Assembly: GCA_002269645.1 (NCBI GenBank)
Contig: NIVC01001389.1
Span: forward strand, 62,001-126,000
From: Macrostomum lignano
Taxonomy: Eukaryota
Length of the DNA: 64,000 nt
Reading direction: 5' to 3'
Every line of letters begins with the position of its first letter. Position 1 is the first letter of the stretch. Shown here piece after piece: positions 47,365-62,494 of this stretch. The notes beneath the pieces are model-generated. The model was not told the origin of the DNA. It saw only the letters and a list, made by a program, of their open reading frames with translations, and made no database searches. The translations under genes and the position numbers were made by a program.

Positions 47365-48683
47365 TCAGGCGATCACTTTCCCCCGCCGCAGCTCCAGCAG
47401 CTCCTCGCAGCCGCAGTCCAGCAGCTCGCCGAGCACCTCGTCAGTGTGCTCACCCAGCCTGGGCGGCGGCCGCGTCACTTCACCGCGCCGGCCGTCAAAA
47501 CGGACAGCGGGACCCGGAGCGGTGACCCGGCCGGCCGCCGGGTGCTCGCAGGTGACCAGCAGGCCGCTGGCCGGATCTGCCACCGGCGGGCTGGCCAGGG
47601 CCTCCGCCACGGTGTTCACCGGGCCGTACGGCAGGTCGGAGCCCTCCAGCGCCGCCAGCCAATCCGCCAGCGGCCGGGCGCGCACCAGGGCCTGAATTAG
47701 CGGGATCAGGCTCGTCCGGTTAGCAACCCGCAGCCGGTTGCTAAGGAAGCGAGGATCCGTTGCTAGGTGGGGAGCGCCGAGCCGGCGGCAGAGGACGCCG
47801 AATTGGCGGTCGTTGCCGGCGCCCAGGATGAGTTGGCGGCGGTCGCTGGTGTCAAAGGCCTGGTAGGGCGCGAGGTTGGCGTGCCCTGTGCCCCAGCGGC
47901 TCGGCTCCTGGCCTTCGAGGGTCGGTGGGTTCTGTGACGGACAGACAGACAGACTGACTGACAGACAGACAGACAGACTCTGAGCCCCTCACCGGTGTGC
48001 AGGAAGCTGGCAGCCACATGCGACATGGTGGCCACCTGGGTGTCCAGCAGGTTGGCGTCGATCCAGCAGCCCCGGCCGACCTCCCCCAGACTCTCGGCCG
48101 TCCGCCGCCGGTACAGGGCGGCCAGGATGGCGGACAGGGCATACAGGCCGGTGGACAGGTCCGTGACGGCCACCCCGGCCCGGACGGGCGGACCGTCGGG
48201 CTCCCCGGTGATGCCGAGGAAGCCGCCGATGGCAGCCGCGGCGACGTCGTAGCCGGCCCGCCGGCGCCACGGCCCGGACTGGCCGAAGCCGGAGATGCTG
48301 CAGTAGATGAGGCCGGGATTCTAGGCGCTCAGCGAGGCAAAGTCCAGCCCGCGCTTCGCCAGCTTGCCGGGCACGAAGTTCTCCAGCAGGACGTCGCAGC
48401 GCCGGGACAGCCGGCGGACCAGGTCGGCCCCGGCCGGCTGGCCGAAGTCCAGGCAGACACTGCGCTTGTTGCGGTTGACACTCAGGAAGTACACGGAGTC
48501 CTCGGCCGCGAACGGCGGCCCCCACTGCCGGGTCTCGTCCCCGCCGCCCGGCCGCTCCACCTTGATAACATCTGCGCCCATATCGCCCAGGATCATTGAG
48601 CAGTAGGGCCCGGCAAGCACCCGGGTGAGGTCCAGGACTCGAATCCCGGCTAGGGGCCGGTGGGCACTGATGGGGACTGGCGG
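47365..48683 (-). CDS. SUGCT: CoA-transferase family III (CaiB/BaiF; succinyl-CoA:glutarate CoA-transferase-like) with an in-frame TAG; start exon not certain
   Basis: Exon 48683-47993 (PLAGIRVLDLTRVLAGPYCSMILGDMGADVIKVERPGGGDETRQWGPP..NRNKRS..DVLLENFVPG..LSA*NPGLIYCSISGFGQSGP..GYD) and exon 47912-47365 (GHANLAPYQAF..PYGPVNTV..PPPRLGEHTDEVL). TAG at 48321-48323. Confidence 0.9.
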
Positions 48684-48719
48684 CTGTGGGAATCAGAATC
48701 GTGACGAATAGAAGCAAGG

Positions 48720-48928: not shown

Positions 48929-49512
48929 CAGTCTGGCTCCCCATTCGCGGCTGACCGCAGCGAGCGAGGGCTGGTTCAGCAAGCACTCGTACGGGTATTT
49001 GCCCTCTCGCTAAATTCGACAATTAGCTCATCTAATTGCAGGAAGCGAGCGAGAGGCGCACAGGATGGGGATGGGAAGCGGGGGCAGCCAGCACGCGCAA
49101 CAGGAAATCTTTAATGATGACGAAAAGCAGGTGGGGTCGCAGCTCGAATCCCGACCCGGCAGTGCTGCTCTTTTCCACCCCAAGAGCGTGCCTTCCCGCT
49201 GCCAACTGAAGGATAAAAAAACCGCCCCTAAGATCATTACCTCCGGTAAAAAAGGTGGAATTTTCCAGAATGATCCAACGACTCCAGCAGCAGCGTGGCT
49301 TCAGCTCATAATGACCCCCCGCCAGCAGGCTTTGAGAACAGGCAGTTTTCAAGTGAAACACGAAAAGCACGGCTTGAAGCCTTTTTTGTTTCTTCAATCA
49401 TCGGCTGATCTGTAGCAGTGGCAATGATTACAAACGGCATGCGGTGTATTTTGGTCAGATTGGAACATTTGCATAGCAACTACAAGAGTTTGGATTTTCT
49501 AATCCCAGCTGT

Positions 49513-50037
49513 TCAGCTTCTTGACGACCGGGACGCCTTCGACTTGGCGCCCTCGGCCAGCCGGTCCAGGCGCTCCCTGCCGGAGTCCTTGGCGGCGATG
49601 TTGCCTGGCGGAGCCACAAAGTAGTGCTCCTCGGTCTCGGCCGCGTTGCTCAGCACGGCCGTTCTGGGCTGCTCCGCCGGGGTGTCCGCGCGCAAAGGGC
49701 ATCGCCAGCCCCAGGCCTCCGGCAGAGAGGTCATCGGTTCGACCTCAGGACCAGCGTGCACCAGGCGAAGCTCGTCAGCGAACCGGACAGCCTCAGCCAC
49801 CACTCGGACAGTGTCCGCGGTGTCAAACTGGACGAGGGACAGCCGCTCGAGCAGGGCGATCGTGTCCGAGTCGATGGCGGTGGGCGGGGGAAGCTCGGAG
49901 TCCGCAACGTTGCGCCACGTAGGAGCGTCGGGCACCAGACGGTGGCGGCAGCGGCGGCCGGCGGGCGGGGAGTCAGCGGCGCCGCATGAGCTGCTCGAGC
50001 TGCTGCAGAGATGCCGGGGAAGCCGTTGCCAGGGCCG
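49513..50037 (-). CDS. GATC: Glutamyl-tRNA(Gln) amidotransferase subunit C, mitochondrial; start unresolved
   Basis: IALLERLSLVQF..VAEAVRFADEL..VEPMTSL..LRAD..VLSNAAETEEHYFVAPPGNI matches eukaryotic GatC. The N-terminus is R/S/L-rich like a presequence, but there is no upstream in-frame ATG. Confidence 0.85.
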   Translation of the reverse strand, partial: RPWQRLPRHLCSSSSSSCGAADSPPAGRRCRHRLVPDAPTWRNVADSELPPPTAIDSDTIALLERLSLVQFDTADTVRVVAEAVRFADELRLVHAGPEVEPMTSLPEAWGWRCPLRADTPAEQPRTAVLSNAAETEEHYFVAPPGNIAAKDSGRERLDRLAEGAKSKASRSSRS

Positions 50038-50087
50038 CTGCGGCCCTAGCAACAACAGTGCACGTGGCAGTGCACGCAGCAGAAGGA

Positions 50088-50483
50088 GATAAACCAGAGA
50101 CTCTTAAGACTGCAGCTCACTGATAAACCAGAGACTCTTAAGACTGCAGCTCACTGATAAACCAGACTCTTAAGACTGCAGCTCACTGATAAACCAGATA
50201 CACCCTGACTGCAGCTCAGTGATAAACCAGAGACTCTTAAGACTGCAGCTCACTGATAAACCAGAGACACCCTGACTGCAGCTCACTGATAAACCAGAGA
50301 CACCCTGACTGCAGCTCACTGATAAACCAGAGACACCCTGACTGCAGCTCACTGATAAACCAGAGACACCCTGACTGCAGCTCACTGATAAACCAGAGAC
50401 ACCCTGACTGCAGCTCACTGATAAACCAGATACACTCACACTGCAGCTCACTGATAAACCAGAGACACCCTGACTGCAGCTCA
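50088..50483. repeat. 33-bp minisatellite (GACTGCAGCTCACTGATAAACCAGAGACACCCT)
   Basis: About 12 copies directly upstream of GATC coding sequence. Confidence 0.95.
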
Positions 50484-52601
50484 CAGTTGCGAGAAAAGTT
50501 AGTGAACCCTGACTGAACTTTTAGAACAATCGCAAGTCAATTTTTACCGGCGTTTATTCAAAGAAACAAAAGTTTTAGCAACTAGTTCTGCTCATGTTCA
50601 GCAAAAACTATTGCGTAGTTTGAGCGCAAACTAACCGAAACGAAAAACCAATTTCGAAAAAGATAGTGAACCGCAAAGTTTGGATTGGTCAAACCACAAT
50701 GCATGATGCTTTTTCGAAACCTTTCACGCGAAAACTGTTGCACCAACTGCAATTTAAATGCATTTGCCCAAAGCTGTAAGCCTCAGAGGCTTGCTGCACT
50801 TGTTGTATCATCTCACAACACTGGCCTCGGATACAAGAAGAATTGCCAACCAACTTCGGCTCAGTGCTTCCACTGCTAGAGCTGTCATTCACAAATGGCA
50901 GAAGCGCAACACTGTGACTCCACTGCCTCGGAAGTGGACGGACGACCTGCCAAAGTTTCTGAGCGCACAGCAAGGAGAGCTCAGCCTGTCGACAGTGATC
51001 CAACCGTGACTGCAAGTCAATTGCAGCATCAGCTGATCAATGCAGAATAGAGGTGCACAAGTCAACGGTGCAGGAGTCTTTGAACCGTCAAGGACTTCAC
51101 AGACGAGTTGCTCGCAAGAGACAAAAATTCAAGAGTTGTTTGGGTGGGTACATTTCGCAGAGACGGCTGGCATTAAAACAAAATAATGCATTGCCTACTA
51201 CAAAGTATAGAGGTAGCAGAATCATGCTGTAGGGCTGTAAGTGCTGCAAGTGGAACTGGAAATAATGTCCAACTTCATGAAATTATGAACTCGGTCATGT
51301 GTTAGAATTGAATGAGTTGGAGAGGTTCTGGGTGAGTTGGAGAGGTTCTGGGTGAGTTGGAGAGGTTCTGGGTGAGTTGGAGAGGTTCTGGGTGAGTTGG
51401 AGAGGTTCTGGGTGAGTTGGAGAGGTTCTGGGTGAGTTGGAGAGGTTCTGGGTGAGTTGGAGAGGTTCTGGGTGAGTTGGAGAGGTTCTGGGTGAGTTGG
51501 AGAGGTTCTGGGTGAGTTGGAGAGGTTCTGAATGAGTTGGAGAGGTTCTGGGTGAGTTGGAGAGGTTCTGAATGAGTTGGAGAGGTTCTGAATGAGTTGG
51601 AGAGGTTCTGAATGAGTTGGAGAGGTCATGGATGAGTTGGAGAGGTTCTGGGTGAGTTGGAGAGGTTCTGAATGAGTTGTGAAGAGGTTCTGGGTGATTT
51701 GGAGAGGTCATAGATGAGTTGGAGAGGTTCTGAATGAGTTGGAGAGGTCATGGATGAGTTGGAGAGGTTCTGGGTGAGTTGGAGAGGTTTTGAATGAGTT
51801 GGAGATGTTCTGGGTGATTTGGAGAGGTCATAGATGAGTTGGAGAGGTTCTGAATGAGTTGGAGAGGTTCTGGGTGATTTGGAGAGGTCATAGATGAGTT
51901 GGAGAGGTTCTGAATGAGTTGGAGAGGTTCTGAATGAGTTGGAGAGGTTCTGGGTGAGTTGGAGAGGTTCTGGGTGAGTTGGAGATGTTCTGGGTGAGTT
52001 GGAGAGGTCATGGATGAGTTGGAGAGGTTCTGGGTGAGTTGGAGAGGTTCTGAATGAGTTGGAGAGGTTCTGGGTGAGTTGGAGAGGTCATGGATGAGTT
52101 GGAGAGGTTCTGGGTGAGTTGGAGAGGTCATGGATGAGTTGGAGAGGTTCTGAATGAGTTGGAGAGGTTCTGGGTGAGTTGGAGAGGTCATGGATGAGTT
52201 GGAGAGGTTCTGAATGAGTTGGAGAGGTTCTGGGTGAGTTGGAGAGGTCATGGATGAGTTGGAGAGGTTCTGAATGAGTTGGAGAGGTTCTGCACTGTAG
52301 AATGGGAAAGATTCCTGGAGAGCAGTGCTGTAAATTGATTAACAGTCACAAAAATGTATTGCAGGCTGTTATTGCTGCTATGGATGGAGTTACGAGTACA
52401 AAGCATTAGTTGCTGGAATTTCAAATAAGTTCACTAACTTTTTCAACAGCTGTTTTGTTTTGTGGCCAATTGTGTCCAAACTATGCAATATTTTTTACAG
52501 AAAAGTTACGTAATCACTCACCTCACTAATCACTCCTTAAGAATAATTCACTGGTGCTGATAGAAATTCATTTAGGGTTCACTAAATTGTTCTAATCACT
52601 G
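50484..52601 (+). mobile_element. Tc1/mariner relic (IR/DR type), catalytic core deleted
   Basis: Imperfect TIRs CAGT..TTAGTGAACCCT / AGGGTTCACTAA..ACTG with inner repeats at about 50665 and 52431. HTH fragment RRIANQLRLSASTARAVIHKWQ; LPTTKYRGSRIML*GC segment at about 51190; C-terminal FCTVEW-KIPGEQCCKLINSHKNVLQAVIAA. No TA TSD seen. Confidence 0.82.
51311..52292. repeat. 20-bp satellite (GAGTTGGAGAGGTTCTG[GGT/AAT]) inside the Tc1 relic
   Basis: About 49 units with three main variants. Confidence 0.97.
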
Positions 52602-53036: not shown

Positions 53037-53610
53037 TGTTAGGGCGATTCTCACCTGGGCTGTTAGGGCGATTCTCACCTGGGCTGTTAGAGCGATTCTC
53101 ACCTGGGCTGTTAGGGCGATTCTCACCTGGGCTGTTAGGGCGATTCTCACCTGGGCTGTTAGGGCGATTCTCACCTGGGCTGTTAGGGCGATTCTCACCT
53201 GGGCTGTTAGAGCGATTCTCACCTGGGCTGTTAGGGCGATTCTCACCTGGGCTGTTAGGGCGATTCTCACCTGGGCTGTTAGGGCGATTCTCACCTGGGC
53301 TGTTAGGGCGATTCTCACCTGGGCTGTTAGAGCGATTCTCACCTGGGCTGTTAGGGCGATTCTCACCTGGGCTGTTAGGGCGATTCTCACCTGGGCTGTT
53401 AGGGCGATTCTCACCTGGGCTGTTAGGGCGATTCTCACCTGGGCTGTTAGGGCAACTCTCACCTGGGCTGTTACGGCAATTCTCACCTGGGTTGCTAGGG
53501 CGATTCTCACCTGGGCTGTTAGGGCAATTCTCACCTGGGCTGTTAGGGCGATTCTCACCTGGGCTGTTAGGGCGATTCTCACCTGGGCTGTTAGAGCGAT
53601 TCTCACCTGG
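53037..53610. repeat. 24-bp minisatellite (GTTAGGGCGATTCTCACCTGGGCT), about 24 copies
   Basis: Direct inspection; lies just downstream of the SPATA20 stop. Confidence 0.97.
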
Positions 53611-53766: not shown

Positions 53767-56700
53767 TCAGATGCCGGCCAGCAGGTCAGCCAGCTCGGCA
53801 GGCTCGGTCACGGGCAGCTGGCAGGTGAAATCCCGGCACAGGTAGGCGGCTGCCCGGCCATCAATCGGGCCGTAGCCGCTGCACCATCCAGCATCCTGCG
53901 GCCTCATCAGCGTCAGGTCCGGCCGGCGCACGGGACCGTCCGAGGACCAGGCGGCCTGCAGCAGCGGCTCCAGCTGGTCCTCGGCCGGGGCGGCCAGCAC
54001 CAGGGTGGCCGGTGGCCCGGCCGCGGTCAGCAGGCAGGCGGAGGCCATCTCGGTCAGGGCCATGGGCTGCCGGCCCAGGGTCTGGCTGAACCTGTTCAAC
54101 AGCTCGCCGCCGCGGCTGCTGTAGCTGCCGCTGTTGTCGTCTAAGGCGCGCAGACTGGCCAGGTTGACGGCCGACACGGAGTTGCCGCACGGCTCGGCGC
54201 CGTCGTGATCGTCGAGGAGGCGCAGCGGCAGCTCGGGGGCAGCGGCGTTGGCGGCGTCGCCCGCATCAGCTGACTGGCGCCTGCGGGGGCGGTTCGAGTC
54301 TTGACTTTTGGTTCTTGGGGAGGCTGCTGAGTCTTGGTTCTTGGGGAGGCTGCTGAGTCTTGGTTCTTGGGGAGGCTGCTGAGTCTTGGTTCTTGGGGAG
54401 GCTGCTGAGTCTTGGTTCTTGGGGAGGCTGCTGAGTCTTGGTTCTTGGGGAGGCTGTTTGAGTCTTATTTGGAACGTGAAGCTGACATCCCTAAGGTGTC
54501 ACCTGGTGTCAAAGTAGGCCTTGGCCTCCGAGCACCAGAAAGCCGCATCCTGCTCAGCCTGCAGCTGGCGCGCCCAAGCCAGGTAGGGCTGGTGCAGGGT
54601 CGCCCGGTACAGCTGCAGCAGGGCGCCGATGAGCTGGGCGTGATCGTCAAGGAATGCCTTCACGGGCGCCGGGCCCAGGGTGACGCCGTCCTGGCCGTCC
54701 GGATAGGCCACTCGGTACAGGGTGCGCGTGTCCTCGCGCCACAGATGGCACCGAATGAACTCTGCTCCGCGACGGGCGTGCTCGAGCCAGTCGGGACGGT
54801 TCAACAGACGGCCGGCCTGGGCCAGCGCCGAGATCATCATGGAGTTCCAGCAGGTGAGCAGCTGGAGCAGGTGGGATTATCTTCGGTAAAACGAGCTAGT
54901 CCGTTGCTATGTTGTTGCTAGGGGATATCGACTCGTTGCTAAGGGACGCATGCACGTTGTTAAGGGACGCCTGTACGTTGCTAAGGGACGCCTGTACGTT
55001 GCTAGGGACACCTATACGTTGCTAGGGATATCTATACGTTGCTAAAGGACACGTATACGTTGCTAAGGGACGCTATACGTAGCTAAAGGACACCTATACG
55101 TTGCTAAGGGACACCTATACGTTGCTAAGGCACACCTATACGTTGCTAATGAACACCTAAGCGTTGCTAACACTATACGCTGCTGTCGACAATATGATGT
55201 GAAGAGGCTCCCCTGTTGACCAACAGCTCTAAAACCCCCCACCTTGTCGTCCAGATGCGGCGGCGGTCGCTTCGCTCGAACCTCGCGCAGCCGGAGCAGG
55301 CAGTCGGTGATGCCTGCCCGCAGCTGCTGCTCTGACAGGCCGAGCTGCTGGGCCAGCTCCCGCCAGGCCTTGCGCCGGATCAGCACGTTCTGGCCGCGCA
55401 GCTCGTCGTGCGGGTCCTGGTATGGGTCCACGTTGCCCGCCTCGGCGCAAGAGTACACCGCGGCAAATGCCTGCGGGCCGGAGTGACGGGCAGAAGCTGG
55501 GAATGAAGGGGATCTGGGAGCTGGGTGGCGGTCTTGCAACTGAGGATCTGAAAGACTGGCCCAGCAACTGAGGGTCTGGAAGGCTGGCCCAGCAACTGAG
55601 GATCTGGGAGGCTGGCCTACTAGCAACTGTGGATCTGAAAGACTGGCCCAGCAACTGAGGGTCTGAAAGGCTGGCCCAGCAACTGAGGATCTGGGAGGCT
55701 GGCTTAGCAACTGAGGATCTGGGAGGCTGGCTTAGCAACTGAGGATCTGGATCTTCCCGCTCACCTTCAAATAGGGCACGTCGCCAATTGAGCCGCCCTC
55801 CAGCGCGGCGGCCAGCTGTCCCCAGGTCCACACGCAGAAGGCGCCCTCCTTCTTGCCGTGCCCGTGGCCGCCAGCGGCATCCTCAGCCGAGCCCTCCGGC
55901 AGCGAGTCGGCGTCCTGGGCGCTGTAGAAGCCGCCGGCCGGGTGTGACAGCTCCCGACAGACGTACTCCACAATGCCCACGGCCGTGTCTGCGAGCTCCT
56001 TGGCCGTCCCGGCGTCCTCCTTGGCGCAGAGACGCGAGGTGACAGCGAAGGTGGAGCACAGCTGGGCCTGGTCGTACAGCATCTTCTCAAAGTGCGGCAC
56101 GTGCCACTTGGCGTCCGTGGAGTAGCGGTGGAAGCCGCCGTTGACGTGGTCGTGGATGCCGCCGCGGGCCATGCAGTCTAGCGTGAGGCGGCACATCGCC
56201 AGGGCCTCGGCGGACTCGGCCGGGTCGGCGGCGGACCGCAGGCCGGCCAGGCGCAGCAGGAAGGCCAGCAGCGACGGCTGCGGGAATTTGGGGGCCCGGC
56301 CGAAGCCGCCCAGCTCCGAGTCGAACCGGTCGCGCAGCTGGCGGAGGCAGAGGGCGGCCGGCCGGCTCGGGTCGAAGGCGGCCGCGGACGGCGGCGCTGG
56401 CGGCACCGCGTGTTTGCGGAGGGCGGCCAGAATCTCCGTGCCCTGCGTCTCCACCTGGGGTGGGTTAGAGGAGACAGAGGTTTGAACACTTTGAAAGCGT
56501 CTGAGCACACTGATCTCTTCCAATAAGCGTCTGAGCACACTGATCTCTTCCAATAAGCGCCTGAGCACACTGATCTCTTCCAATAAGCGTCTGAGCACAC
56601 TGATCTCTTTCAATAAGCGCCTGAGCACACTGATCTCTTCCAATAAGCGCCTGAGCACACTGATCTCTTCCAATAAGCGTCTGAGCACACTGATCTCTTC

Positions 56701-58654
56701 CAATAAGCGTCTGAGCACACTGATCTCTTCCAATAAGCGTCTGAGCACACTGATCTCTTCCAATAAGCGTCTGAGCACACTGATCTCTTCCAATAAGCGT
56801 CTGAGCACACTGATCTCTTCCAATAAGCGCCTGAGCACACTGATCACTCCCGATAAGCACTGAGCACACTGAACACTCCCGATAAGCACTGAGCACACTG
56901 AACACTCCCGATAAGCACTGAGCACACTGATCACTCCCGATAAGCACTGAGCACACTGAACACTCCCGATAAGCACTGAGCACACTGAACACTCCCGATA
57001 AGCACTGAGCACACTGAACACTCCCGATAAGCACTGAGCACACTGATCACTCCCGATAAGCACTGAGCACACTGAACACTCCCGATAAGCACTGAGCACA
57101 CTGAACACTCCCGATAAGCACTGAGCACACTGATCACTCCCGATAAGCACTGAGCACACTGATCACTTCCAATAAGCGCCTGAGCACACTGATCACTCCC
57201 GATAAGCACTGAGCACACTGATCACTCCCGATAAGCACTGAGCACACTGATCACTCCCGATAAGCACTGAGCACACTGATCACTCCCGATAAGCACTGAG
57301 CACACTGAACACTCCCGATAAGCACTGAGCACACTGAACACTCCCGATAAGCACTGAGCACACTGAACACTCCCGATAAGCACTGAGCACACTGATCACT
57401 TCCGATAAGCACTGAGCACACTGATCACTCCCGATAAGCACTGAGCACACTGAACACTCCCGATAAGCACTGAGCACACTGATCACTCCCGATAAGCACT
57501 GAGCACACGCATCGCACCTGGTCCCTCTTGTTCCTCCAGCTGTCGGACAGAGACTGCAGGACAGAGGCGAACCCGGGCCGGCCGAAGTACCTGTTCTCAG
57601 GCGGAAAGTAGGTGCCGCCAAAGATAGGCCGCTTGTCCGGGGTCAGCCAGACGGACAGGGGCCAGCCACCGCCGACTCCCAGGGCCAGCACGAAGTTCAT
57701 GTACACCCGGTCCACGTCCGGCCGCTCTTCGCGGTCCAACTGCGGGAATGGAGGCGCAGATTTTAGTTCGGCATAAGCATTATTGATGGCGGATTTCAGA
57801 CGTGACGGGATTAAGAGGCTGGAGAATTTAGATAAGTAATTCAGGGGATTAGGGAGTTCGGGGAAGGGACAGGAAGAATTTATCTGAAGCTTTTATGGGA
57901 TTGGGAATTTAGAGGCTGGTGGTTATCCAAAGGATGGGGAATTTAGAAGCTAGGGGTATGCAAGGGATGGGGAATTTAGAAGCTAAGGGTATGCAAAGGA
58001 TGGGGAATTTAGAAGCTGGGGTATGCAAGGGATGGGGAATTTAGAAGCTGGGGTATGCAAGGGATGGGGAATTTAGAAGCTGGGGTATGCAAGGGATGGA
58101 GAATTTAGAAGCTGGGGTATGCAAGGGATGGAGAATTTAGAAGCTAGGGGTATGCAAGGGATGGAGAATTTAGAAGCTGGGGTATGCAAGGGGTGGAGAA
58201 TTTAGAAGCTAGGGGTATGCAAGGGATGGAGAATTTAGAAGCTAGGGGTATGCAAGGGATGGGGAATTTAGAAGCTAGGGGTATGCAAGGGATGGGGAAT
58301 TTAGAAGCTAGGGGTATGCAAGGGATGGGGAATTTAGATATATGTAGATCAGCATACTCCAACCCAGTAGCTCACCTTGATGCTGACAAAATTGTCATTG
58401 AGCAGCTTGGCAATGTCGGCATTCTGAAAGGACTCCCTGTGCATGACGTGGCACCAGTGGCAGGTGGAGTAGCCAATGCTCAGGAACACCAGCTGGTCCC
58501 TGGCCTTGGCCAGCGCGAACGCTTCGTCCCCCCAGGGCTGCCAGTGGACCGGGTCGTTGGCGTGCTGGGCCAGGTAAGGCGACCGGGACAGGTGCAGGCG
58601 GTTGCTGGCCTGACTGCTGCTGCTTCTAGAGGACTGGGCCGCTGCCTGAGCCAT
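53767..58654 (-). CDS. SPATA20: Spermatogenesis-associated protein 20 (thioredoxin-like DUF255 plus glycoside hydrolase-like domain)
   Basis: Exons 58654-58376 ([42 protein letters not shown]), 57739-57518 ([30 protein letters not shown]), 56454-55765 ([51 protein letters not shown]), 55470-55243 (PHLDDK), 54861-54503 ([15 protein letters not shown]), 54280-53767 ([27 protein letters not shown]). All phases are consistent. Confidence 0.97.
54305..54460. repeat. 26-bp minisatellite (GCTGCTGAGTCTTGGTTCTTGGGGAG) in SPATA20 intron 5
   Basis: Direct inspection. Confidence 0.92.
54925..55165. repeat. About 21-bp degenerate repeat (GTTGCTAAGGGACGCCTGTAC) in SPATA20 intron 4
   Basis: Direct inspection. 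Confidence 0.85.
55520..55752. repeat. 28-bp minisatellite in SPATA20 intron 3, same family as 25600-26040
   Basis: The reverse complement reads CCAGCCTCCCAGATCCTCAGTTGCT. Confidence 0.88.
56497..57508. repeat. Compound 30-bp / 29-bp minisatellite filling SPATA20 intron 2
   Basis: GCGTCTGAGCACACTGATCTCTTCCAATAA block followed by GCACTGAGCACACTGAACACTCCCGATAA block. Confidence 0.97.
57920..58337. repeat. 33-bp minisatellite (TTTAGAAGCTAGGGGTATGCAAGGGATGGGGAA) in SPATA20 intron 1
   Basis: Direct inspection. Confidence 0.95.
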
Positions 58655-58794
58655 CCTGCGAGCTGCTGTTGTGGCTGCTGCTGCTCTGAAGAGCTCGAAA
58701 CTCAACAGGAATGCGGGATTGGAGCTTTGATGAAGAAGGCGTAATACGGTATCCACCAGCACAAGCCTTATGTTGCTATGGAGCTCTGAGACAC

Positions 58795-61560: not shown

Positions 61561-62494
61561 TTTACCCTAACCAATTAGAAACTCTGCTTTGACTATCTTG
61601 TGTGAAATGAAAGAACAAGCAACAGTAAGAGCATATATCAGCAGTTATCGAAACAACTTCTGTTCCAGTTAAACATTTTTATTTCAAGCCCCAAACAGGC
61701 AGCAGACAAAATACGCGGACTCGTCTAATGTCGCACTATTAATAAGCAAAGAAGGGAAAAACAGAGAATGAAAAGACCAGTCGAAAAAAGCAAAAAGCCC
61801 AGAAAAATTCTGTCGTTGGATTCGGTGGTATTTGATCAGTTGGCGCCATCCGGCACTCTTAGCAGACAGAGCTGAGCATAAAAAGCAGTTAAAATAATGA
61901 CAATAAAAAGGACAGTCCAAAATTAAATAAAAAGCAAAGATTCACAGACGGGAAAACTAAAGAGATAAAAGTTTTGATTCGATTATAATTTAGCTTTTCT
62001 TATGCATTTCCAATTGCCAGTTCCCACTCCCCTATAAAACAGCAATTGAAGATTATAAGCACAGGCGGGATTAATGATTCAATTATTAGCACACAGATAA
62101 ACAACAGGGATAAACGGAGAAGAGGATTACGAATGAGTTCGAGCAGACAAAACAGTTTAGCATTCTGTCAAATTTAATGCGAGAGAAAATAAAACGCAGA
62201 GGATGAATAATTAATTAGCTCATCAGGGCAGCAGCCACGCCAAGTAATTCGGTAATTTTCTAAAAACATTCTCAGAGCAAATTTCAATTGGGCAATTCCG
62301 CATCTAGTTTGATCATAGAGATGGAGACTCAGCTGCTGACCCAGATTCAGCTTGCAGTCTCTGCAGCCTTTTCCAATCCCGTACGTTGATCATAATTAAC
62401 TAGTCTAGAATTGATTATTACTGACTAAATTGGAACATTAAAACACAACAGTTCTTATATCTAACATAACTTAGAACACACAGCAATCCTGGCA

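What the first reader, a model, noticed from the sequence alone, without database searches (positions are those of the whole stretch)
49513..50090. GATC has no start codon in reach, but a spliced-leader AUG would complete a mitochondrial presequence
The first in-frame ATG (EPMTSL) is deep inside the conserved domain. Upstream lie only a minisatellite and a Tc1 relic, and I found no ATG-plus-donor exon in frame. A phase-0 CAG at 50038-50040 follows a pyrimidine-rich stretch. Flatworm spliced leaders end in AUG, which can act as the initiator. Trans-splicing here gives M-RPWQRLPRHLCSSSSSS, an Arg/Ser/Leu-rich, acid-free presequence. A similar phase-0 ATG-less candidate exon (49009-48956) precedes SUGCT.
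Basis: partly seen in the sequence, partly recalled or inferred. Interest (0 to 1): 0.7.

Follow-up and report, generated by a model that had tools for sequence, protein, structure and literature searches.

The report
Flatworm GatC gene lacking start codon
In the flatworm Macrostomum lignano the gene for the mitochondrial GatC protein has no start codon of its own and probably borrows the AUG at the end of the trans-spliced leader, a mechanism already documented in flatworms, but I could reach no transcript that proves it here.

Summary
The window is Macrostomum lignano Mlig_3_7 (NIVC01001389.1:62001-126000). The minus-strand ORF 50103-49513 is a genuine animal-type mitochondrial GatC. It has no in-frame ATG before 49734, which lies inside the conserved domain. 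A phase-0 CAG acceptor sits at 50040-50038. The M. lignano spliced leader ends in ATG, so splicing there gives a 175-aa protein. Its N-terminal length and composition match those of GatC orthologues. The sequence observations therefore hold.

The flatworm SL 3'-AUG has been known as an initiator since Cheng et al. 2006. Several points weaken the specific claim:
- A phase-0 AG is what chance gives (2 of 7 AGs).
- The acceptor context is mediocre.
- The public transcript-based models in all three paralogous copies start 27-33 nt upstream of the proposed acceptor, and not after any AG.
- Five environmental transcripts carrying this leader all bypass its AUG.

The SUGCT side claim needs correcting. 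The proposed exon 49009-48956 is not coding. SUGCT is itself ATG-less and opens directly at a strong phase-0 CAG (48686-48684).

Best reading: SL-AUG initiation at 50037, confidence about 0.5. Interest is low.

The parts
49513..50037 (-). GatC coding exon as it would read after SL addition: RPWQ... to the TGA stop at 49515-49513. With the SL AUG it gives 175 aa.
   Evidence: Translation. Pfam GatC. Orthologue alignment. Identical in paralogue L006. Three differences from L003, two synonymous and one E>Q.
50038..50040 (-). Candidate trans-splice acceptor CAG, phase 0.
   Evidence: hexamer CCGCAG does not match YTNCAG. Pyrimidines 57% in the 23 nt from -25 to -3.
50046..50048 (-). TAG acceptor 8 nt upstream, out of frame. 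The SL AUG here would give an unrelated 105-aa ORF.
50101..50106 (-). In-frame stop TAA (50106-50104), followed immediately by GAG (50103-50101). GAG is the only other in-frame AG. The exon from 50100 would give M-SLVYLLLLRALPRALLLLGPQ-RPWQ..., 196 aa.
49732..49734 (-). First in-frame ATG (EPMTSL), inside the conserved GatC domain. It would give a 73-aa fragment.
49985..49987 (-). Only other ATG near the 5' end. It is out of frame (MRRR-stop).
50058..50075 (-). Hairpin GTGCAC-TGCCAC-GTGCAC containing an E-box CACGTG (50066-50061). The 5' ends of the public gene models (50064; the equivalent of 50070 in L003) fall here.
   Evidence: the 36-nt segment 50085-50050 that contains it folds at -10.5 kcal/mol.
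50088..50484 (.). 33-bp minisatellite, 12 copies. On the minus strand each unit carries a consensus CTGCAG acceptor. The last one (exon from 50109) would give M-S-stop.
   Evidence: Copy number differs between paralogues.
50500..51230 (+). Degenerate Tc1/Sleeping-Beauty-like transposase relic (HTH part), antisense to GatC. On the minus strand it contains the one chance cis-exon candidate, 50888-50817, with a GTGAG donor.
   Evidence: (weak, E=0.006).
48684..48695 (-). SUGCT 5' end. An in-frame TGA (48695-48693) is followed by the acceptor ttcccaCAG (48686-48684). The exon starts at 48683 with PPVPISAHRPLAGIRVLDLTR and has no ATG before the domain. This is the only in-frame AG that yields the protein.
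   Evidence: The NCBI model in paralogue L003 starts exactly at this base.
48956..49009 (-). It is not coding.
   Evidence: Three substitutions against L003, all nonsynonymous. Donor GTCAGC is non-consensus. Absent from all gene models.
48321..48323 (-). Nonsense codon TAG in the window's SUGCT copy. Both paralogues have CAG here.
   Evidence: It explains the truncated 193-aa NCBI model in this copy.
53767..58699 (-). Upstream same-strand gene (Thioredox_DsbH/SPATA20-like, 778 aa). With GatC and SUGCT it forms a co-oriented block present in three copies.

Best explanation
The GatC pre-mRNA of Macrostomum lignano is SL trans-spliced at the CAG acceptor 50040-50038. The 35-nt leader ends in AUG, and joined to CGG CCC TGG... 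that AUG becomes the initiator of a 175-aa GatC precursor. Its first ~35 residues (MRPWQRLPRHLCSSSSSS...RRCRHRL) serve as the mitochondrial targeting region, ahead of the conserved VPDAPTW...YFVAPPGNI core. SUGCT, about 830 nt downstream on the same strand, is handled the same way at 48686-48684, so the two genes probably form an operon-like unit.

Shown: the gene's identity, the missing ATG, the phase of the acceptor, the SL sequence (from the literature), and the orthologue-like N-terminus.

Inferred: that trans-splicing occurs at this site, that the SL AUG is used, and that the product is imported into mitochondria.
For: - Organism and SL. The window is the M. lignano Mlig_3_7 assembly. The SL is CGGTCTCTTACTGCGAAGACTCAATTTATTGCATG, and 30-39% of genes are trans-spliced (PMC8629364, PMC5730564). 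Wiberg et al. note that the terminal ATG is a likely start codon (PMC10468722). In Schistosoma, the SL AUG is in frame in 28% of trans-spliced mRNAs and more than 40 cDNAs need it (Cheng 2006, via PMC9851317; also PMC12582326).
- The gene is real and constrained. It is GatC by Pfam. Its relatives are named as mitochondrial GATC. The ORF is intact in three copies, with 0.6% divergence (2 synonymous, 1 nonsynonymous) against 1.1-3.3% in the flanks. No other M. lignano GatC was found.
- No canonical alternative start exists. The only in-frame ATG is mid-domain. The NCBI record calls the protein 'partial'.
- The junction is in frame and gives 175 aa.
- The distance from Met to the LERLS motif is 62, against an orthologue median of 55.5. 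There are 5 R/K and 1 D/E in the first 30 residues, the same counts as the closest homologue P0002.
- Local precedent. SUGCT's open frame starts 9 nt before a strong phase-0 CAG, and one paralogue's transcript model begins exactly at that base.
Against: - No SL-junction read or transcript could be reached.
- The public, RNA-seq-derived models start at 50064 (two copies) and at the equivalent of 50070 (one copy). That is 27-33 nt upstream of the acceptor and after no AG. The annotation pipeline cuts at SL sites where SL reads were seen (PMC5730564). So either none were seen or the mature mRNA extends upstream.
- The acceptor context is mediocre: CCGCAG rather than YTNCAG, 57% pyrimidines, and a competing TAG 8 nt upstream.
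- An in-frame AG is expected by chance (2 of 7).
- In five SL-capped transcripts carrying this leader, the SL AUG is never the initiator.
- The first 10 residues contain two prolines. No targeting predictor could be run.
Confidence: 0.5

Rival explanations
1. A non-trans-spliced mRNA, with its 5' end at or upstream of about 50070, is translated from an in-frame near-cognate codon. Candidates are CUG at 50097, 50082, 50079, 50070 and 50058, and UUG at 50055 and 50052. This would give a Leu/Arg-rich extension (..LLRALPRALLLLGPQ-RPWQ..).
For: The gene models begin upstream of the CAG acceptor and after no AG. The frame is open back to 50103. The extension is basic, acid-free and presequence-like. 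A hairpin lies at 50075-50058.
Against: Sole non-AUG initiation of a housekeeping gene is rare (general knowledge). Model 5' ends at 50064-50070 would leave almost no leader before most of these codons. The N-terminus would be 14-21 residues longer than the SL-AUG product and sit at the top of the orthologue length range. Model 5' ends in this annotation are noisy, shifting 3-27 nt between paralogues.
Confidence: 0.15
2. A cis-spliced upstream exon with its own ATG joins the CAG (phase 0), TAG (phase 1) or GAG acceptor. One candidate is the exon 50888-50817 with a GTGAG donor, antisense in the Tc1 relic.
For: There are 99 in-phase ATG..GT combinations in the 3.7-kb spacer, one of them with a consensus donor. 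That candidate is identical in all three copies. Flatworm acceptors are often shared between cis- and trans-splicing (PMC12582326).
Against: No transcript-based model in any of the three copies contains an upstream exon. The spacer consists of minisatellites and a transposon relic. The number of candidates is what chance gives. The copies are too similar for the identity to carry weight.
Confidence: 0.12
3. SL trans-splicing supplies the AUG, but at the upstream in-frame GAG (50103-50101, exon from 50100). The product is a 196-aa protein beginning MSLVYLLLLRALPRALLLLGPQ.
For: The junction is in frame. It lies upstream of the annotated 5' ends, which could then be ordinary 5'-truncated models. 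The SUGCT model in L006 and the 402-aa gene model in L012 show such truncation.
Against: GAG is the least-used acceptor triplet in eukaryotes (general knowledge), and CAG dominates in M. lignano (PMC8629364). Pyrimidines upstream are only 48%. A consensus CTGCAG 9 nt upstream would compete and gives M-S-stop. The Met-to-LERLS distance of 83 exceeds 39 of 40 orthologues.
Confidence: 0.07
4. The locus does not make functional GatC. Either it is a decaying copy or the assembly is wrong at the start codon.
For: There is no start codon. The neighbouring SUGCT copy in this window carries a nonsense codon.
Against: All three copies share an intact ORF, with a 2:1 synonymous bias and lower divergence than the flanks. 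No other GatC was found for the species. GatCAB is needed for mitochondrial Gln-tRNA in animals (general knowledge).
Confidence: 0.05

Closest known systems
[quoted passage not shown]
   Same: The SL ends in AUG. The first exon has no ATG and its acceptor is in phase 0. The SL AUG is the only canonical way to open the conserved ORF.
   Different: That work was demonstrated with cDNAs and reporter translation in Schistosoma. Here it is inferred from genome sequence only, in a free-living macrostomorph. The public models do not start at the proposed acceptor.
M. lignano SL trans-splicing and operons (Wudarski 2017, PMC5730564; Ustyantsev & Berezikov 2021, PMC8629364)
   Same: Same organism and same SL. 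GatC and SUGCT are co-oriented and about 830 nt apart, or about 610 nt without the microsatellite. That is within the published 1-kb repeat-adjusted operon criterion.
   Different: The trans-splicing status of these two genes could not be read from the papers or the supplements I could reach. The GatC acceptor lacks the YTNCAG motif found at 44% of sites.
Animal mitochondrial GATC (GatCAB subunit C) precursors
   Same: The conserved core is VPDAPTW...LLERLSLV...VEP(M/L)...YFVAPPGNI. A basic, acid-poor N-terminal extension of about 17-37 residues precedes it.
   Different: Orthologues encode their own Met. In insects GatC sits on a bicistronic mRNA with a PolG2-like ORF (L019), not behind an SL.

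Membership tests
GatC (Glu-tRNA(Gln) amidotransferase subunit C, PF02686), animal mitochondrial type | Match to the GatC profile above the curated threshold | tested here: met
   27.2 bits against a cutoff of 23, E=4.6e-6.
GatC (Glu-tRNA(Gln) amidotransferase subunit C, PF02686), animal mitochondrial type | Closest relatives are animal mitochondrial GATC, and the invariant motifs (LERLSLV, YFVAPPGNI) are present | tested here: met
   There are 23 invariant columns, including E86 R87 L88 S89 L90 V91 and Y161-I169.
SL-AUG-initiated gene (flatworm slORF) | The organism's SL ends in AUG | tested here: met
   The SL sequence is given in PMC8629364. The same 3' end was recovered in six environmental contigs, including an SL RNA gene followed by a GTAAGA donor.
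SL-AUG-initiated gene (flatworm slORF) | The acceptor places the SL AUG in frame with the conserved ORF, with no stop between | tested here: met
   CAG 50040-50038 gives a 175-aa ORF. This is also expected by chance for one AG in three.
SL-AUG-initiated gene (flatworm slORF) | No genomic in-frame AUG is able to encode the full conserved protein | tested here: met
SL-AUG-initiated gene (flatworm slORF) | Transcripts carry the SL joined at that acceptor | not testable with these tools
   No M. lignano RNA contigs were reachable. Indirect evidence is unfavourable, because the model 5' ends lie 27-33 nt upstream.
SL-AUG-initiated gene (flatworm slORF) | Translation starts at the SL AUG | not testable with these tools
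   This needs ribosome profiling, N-terminal proteomics or reporters. In 5 of 5 SL-capped environmental transcripts the SL AUG is bypassed.
Mitochondrial matrix presequence | Basic, acid-poor, hydroxylated N-terminus of typical length, with amphipathic potential | tested here: inconclusive
   5 R/K, 1 D/E and 7 S/T in the first 30 residues. The first acidic residue is at position 23. The maximum hydrophobic moment is 0.93. All values fall within the orthologue range. However, there are two Pro in the first 8 residues, and TargetP/MitoFates were not available.
M. lignano operon (Ustyantsev & Berezikov criterion) | Adjacent same-strand genes less than 1 kb apart after subtracting repeats, with the downstream gene SL trans-spliced | tested here: inconclusive
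   GatC stop 49513 to SUGCT acceptor 48683 is about 830 nt, of which 216 nt is microsatellite. SUGCT's SL status is inferred only from a model that starts exactly at the acceptor in L003.

The most novel reading that the evidence does not exclude
Two neighbouring nuclear genes for mitochondrial enzymes, GatC and SUGCT, lie in one co-oriented block. Both have lost their own start codons and depend obligately on the leader's AUG. Trans-splicing would then be required for their translation and for building GatC's targeting peptide, not only for capping. This would be the first documented SL-AUG-dependent genes in a free-living basal flatworm. It would place this use of the leader before the origin of the parasitic Neodermata.
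Probability: 0.4. Interest if true: 0.35.

Novelty: new member of a known kind. Interest (0 to 1): 0.2.

Why it matters
If confirmed, it adds a clear example from a free-living flatworm to a mechanism known from schistosomes. It also flags a practical annotation problem. In M. lignano, SL-trimmed transcript models turn such genes into '5'-partial' proteins. GatC here and SUGCT next door are examples, so start codons and targeting peptides are systematically lost from the proteome. It opens no new question. The answer is one look at existing SL-read tracks away.

Tried and rejected
- Transcript evidence from public assemblies. The homologue search with GatC found only the three genomic M. lignano models and no RNA-derived M. 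lignano protein. An exact look-up of the predicted M-RPWQ... protein was absent from the collection. The search with SUGCT exon 1 did not return even the species' own proteins.
- Supplement searches. Searches for Mlig033298, GATC and SUGCT in the supplements of three M. lignano papers found nothing usable.
- Junction search. The exact SL-GatC junction is absent from JGI contigs. This is uninformative, because the control shows only a handful of SL-bearing contigs, all from one sample.
- Orthologue 5' ends. L004, L007-L010 and L019 have their own ATGs and no flatworm SL. They are probably not flatworms.
- Paralogue comparison to locate the coding boundary. The 66 nt upstream of the acceptor are identical in all three copies, so this test has no power.
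- An SL RNA gene in the window. None was found.
- The bacterial promoter/terminator scan is irrelevant here, apart from revealing the hairpin.
- Rejected: trans-splicing at TAG 50045 or at CTGCAG/CAGCAG 50002/49999 as productive routes. All are out of frame.

Full report
**Where we are**

An exact protein look-up places the window on Macrostomum lignano assembly Mlig_3_7 (GCA_002269645.1), contig NIVC01001389.1. Window position p corresponds to record position 62000+p. The block SPATA20-like / GatC / SUGCT, all on the minus strand, occurs three times in the assembly:
- in the window;
- on NIVC01000319.1 (L002/L006);
- on NIVC01003500.1 (L003/L012).

This fits the known partial genome duplication of the DV1 line (PMC8629364).

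**Checking the observation**

The ORF is GatC. Pfam PF02686 scores 27.2 bits against a cutoff of 23. The named relatives are animal 'glutamyl-tRNA(Gln) amidotransferase subunit C, mitochondrial' at 34-46% identity.

On the minus strand the frame is open from the TAA at 50106-50104 to the TGA at 49515-49513. Between 50110 and 49513 this strand has only three ATGs:
- 49987, out of frame (MRRR-stop);
- 49734, in frame;
- 49702, out of frame.

In an alignment with eight orthologues, the in-frame Met falls on the conserved VEP[M/L] column. That column lies 66 residues after the start of the conserved block VPDAPTW. The gene therefore has no usable ATG of its own. GenBank accordingly labels the L003 copy 'partial' (PAA51119.1).

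CAG 50040-50038 is in phase 0. ATG plus the exon from 50037 gives the 175-aa protein M-RPWQRLPRHLCSSSSSS....

Upstream, as far as the SPATA20-like stop at 53767, lie:
- a 33-bp minisatellite (50088-50484);
- a weak Tc1/Sleeping-Beauty-type HTH relic on the other strand (Pfam E=0.006, below threshold);
- a 20-bp minisatellite (51312-52292);
- a 24-bp minisatellite (53037-53610).

- The acceptor is not preceded by a clear polypyrimidine tract. Pyrimidines make up 57% of the 23 nt from -25 to -3. The hexamer is CCGCAG, whereas the published trans-splice motif is [T/C]TNCAG, seen at 44% of sites (PMC8629364). The SUGCT acceptor has 70% pyrimidines.
- A phase-0 AG is not a signal in itself. Of the seven AGs between the in-frame stop and residue ~17, two are in frame: GAG with the exon from 50100, and this CAG. 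That is the chance expectation.
- In-phase ATG..GT exons do exist upstream. There are 99 combinations, one of them with a consensus GTGAG donor (50888-50817, antisense in the transposon relic). That number is also what chance gives, and none appears in any gene model.

**Evidence for the SL-AUG reading**

- M. lignano has one SL, CGGTCTCTTACTGCGAAGACTCAATTTATTGCATG. It is added to 30-39% of genes (PMC8629364, PMC5730564).
- All known flatworm SLs end in ATG, and this can serve as the start codon (PMC12582326, PMC7653826). [quoted passage not shown] 2006, as summarised in PMC9851317). Wiberg et al. explicitly kept the ATG when trimming Macrostomum SLs because it is a likely start codon (PMC10468722).
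- The gene looks functional. The three copies share an intact ORF. Window and L003 differ at 3 of 525 coding positions, two of them third-position synonymous and one E>Q. The flanking unique DNA differs by 1.1-3.3%. No other M. lignano GatC appeared.
- The predicted N-terminus is orthologue-like. The distance from Met to the LERLS motif is 62 residues, against a median of 55.5 and a range of 25-95 in 40 orthologues. The first 30 residues contain 5 R/K, 1 D/E and 7 S/T, with the first acidic residue at position 23. The closest homologue P0002 has the same R/K and D/E counts and the same first-acid position, with 9 S/T.

**Evidence against, or at least not fitting**

- The NCBI proteins for this gene are TransDecoder-style 5'-partial ORFs that begin at the first codon of the transcript model. 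P0001 starts RALLLL at 50064, in the window copy and in L006. PAA51119.1 starts LPRALLLL, at the equivalent of 50070, in L003.
- Both starts lie 27-33 nt upstream of the proposed acceptor and follow no AG. The annotation pipeline (TBONE) cuts models at SL-read peaks where such reads were found (PMC5730564). A well-supported SL site at 50037 should therefore have produced a model starting at CGG.
- Two cautions apply to that argument. Model 5' ends in this annotation are noisy. They shift 3-27 nt between paralogues with identical sequence. One model (the 402-aa gene in L012) even starts 6 nt after its own genomic ATG. Also, about 7% of assembled transcripts are precursor RNAs (PMC5730564).
- The extension could therefore be outron sequence. 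It could equally mean that the mature mRNA reaches further upstream. In that case the start would have to be the GAG acceptor at 50103-50101 (SL AUG in frame, 196 aa) or an in-frame CUG/UUG.
- The longer N-termini are less orthologue-like. Their Met-to-LERLS distances are 76-83, at or above the top of the range once P0029 is set aside. GAG is also a poor acceptor.
- These points keep the CAG model ahead, but only at about even odds.

**A small empirical control**

The exact SL-GatC junction is absent from JGI contigs. The SL 3' 25-mer itself hits six contigs. One is a genomic SL RNA gene, with the SL followed by GTAAGA. Five are SL-capped transcripts from one sample, encoding porin, isocitrate dehydrogenase, a CCHC zinc-knuckle protein, GAPDH and a guanidino kinase. 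In all five the SL AUG is out of frame or terminates after 2-41 codons, and the real ORF uses its own AUG 15-110 nt downstream. The leader's AUG is therefore often bypassed, and its use as an initiator is the exception. This matches the schistosome figures. It does not speak for or against GatC specifically.

**SUGCT**

Its three differences from the L003 copy are all nonsynonymous (E>Q, Y>H, C>Y). Its donor GTCAGC is non-consensus. No gene model includes it.

SUGCT is nevertheless the cleaner ATG-less case. An in-frame TGA (48695-48693) is followed by ttcccaCAG (48686-48684). The exon then opens with PPVPISAHR-PLAGIRVLDLTRVLAGP, which is the start of the CoA-transferase III domain (Pfam E=9e-38). 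The first in-frame ATG is inside the domain. This is the only in-frame AG that yields the protein. The L003 gene model begins exactly at the first base after this CAG.

GatC's stop and this acceptor are about 830 nt apart, of which 216 nt is a (CAGA)n microsatellite. An ATTAAA lies at 49115. The pair therefore meets the published spacing criterion for an operon.

**Comparison with what is known, and verdict**

This is the flatworm SL-AUG initiator mechanism of Cheng et al. 2006, applied to two M. lignano genes. GatC family membership is met. For membership of the class 'SL-AUG-initiated gene', the sequence-level features are met. The two defining experimental features, SL junction reads and initiation at the SL AUG, could not be tested.

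Novelty: at most a new member of a known kind.

Confidences:
- SL AUG at 50037: about 0.5.
- Non-AUG initiation: 0.15.
- Upstream cis exon: 0.12.
- SL AUG at the GAG acceptor: 0.07.
- Non-functional locus: 0.05.

Interest is 0.2. The practical value is mainly as a reminder that SL trimming makes such genes look 5'-partial in the M. lignano proteome.

Noticed in passing
window 48321-48323 (minus strand): The window's SUGCT copy has an in-frame TAG where both paralogues have CAG. This copy is a pseudogene or carries an assembly error. It explains why its NCBI model is only 193 aa, against 408 and 412 aa in the paralogues.
   Followed up: partly
window 48683-48695; L003:7344: SUGCT has no ATG before its conserved domain. 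Its ORF opens directly after a strong phase-0 CAG, 9 nt after an in-frame TGA. One paralogue's transcript model starts exactly at that base. It is a cleaner SL-AUG candidate than GatC, but it would leave only about 9 residues before the domain, which is little room for a presequence.
   Followed up: partly
window 50088-50484: Every unit of the 33-bp minisatellite carries a consensus acceptor CTGCAG on the GatC strand. SL addition at the last one (exon from 50109) would give AUG-UCU-UAA. Copy number differs among the three paralogues.
   Followed up: partly
window 50058-50075: A perfect 6-bp hairpin GTGCAC-TGCCAC-GTGCAC contains an E-box CACGTG, just downstream of the minisatellite. The 5' ends of all public GatC models fall inside it. 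It may be a promoter or TSS element, or a reverse-transcription stop.
   Followed up: no
L013-L018 (JGI Ga0316592 and Ga0302322 contigs): Environmental contigs carry the exact Macrostomum SL 3' end. Five are SL-capped mRNAs (porin, IDH, CCHC protein, GAPDH, guanidino kinase) in which the SL AUG is bypassed. One is a genomic SL RNA gene, with the SL followed by GTAAGA.
   Followed up: partly
L011:14357 vs L012:14330; L005/L006/L003 gene starts: Annotated 5' ends of paralogous M. lignano gene models differ by 3-27 nt even though the sequence is identical. One model starts 6 nt after its genomic ATG. 'Partial' N-termini in this proteome are therefore often artefacts of transcript-end calling.
   Followed up: partly
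window 51312-52292 and 53037-53610: Two long minisatellites (20 bp x 49 and 24 bp x 24) produce long spurious ORFs on both strands, in the spacer between the SPATA20-like gene and GatC.
   Followed up: no
L019 (JGI Ga0247655_10001002): A GatC ORF is followed 33 nt later by an HGTP_anticodon (PolG2-like) ORF on one transcript. This is the insect-type bicistronic arrangement. GatC therefore sits in multi-gene transcripts in another animal lineage too.
   Followed up: no
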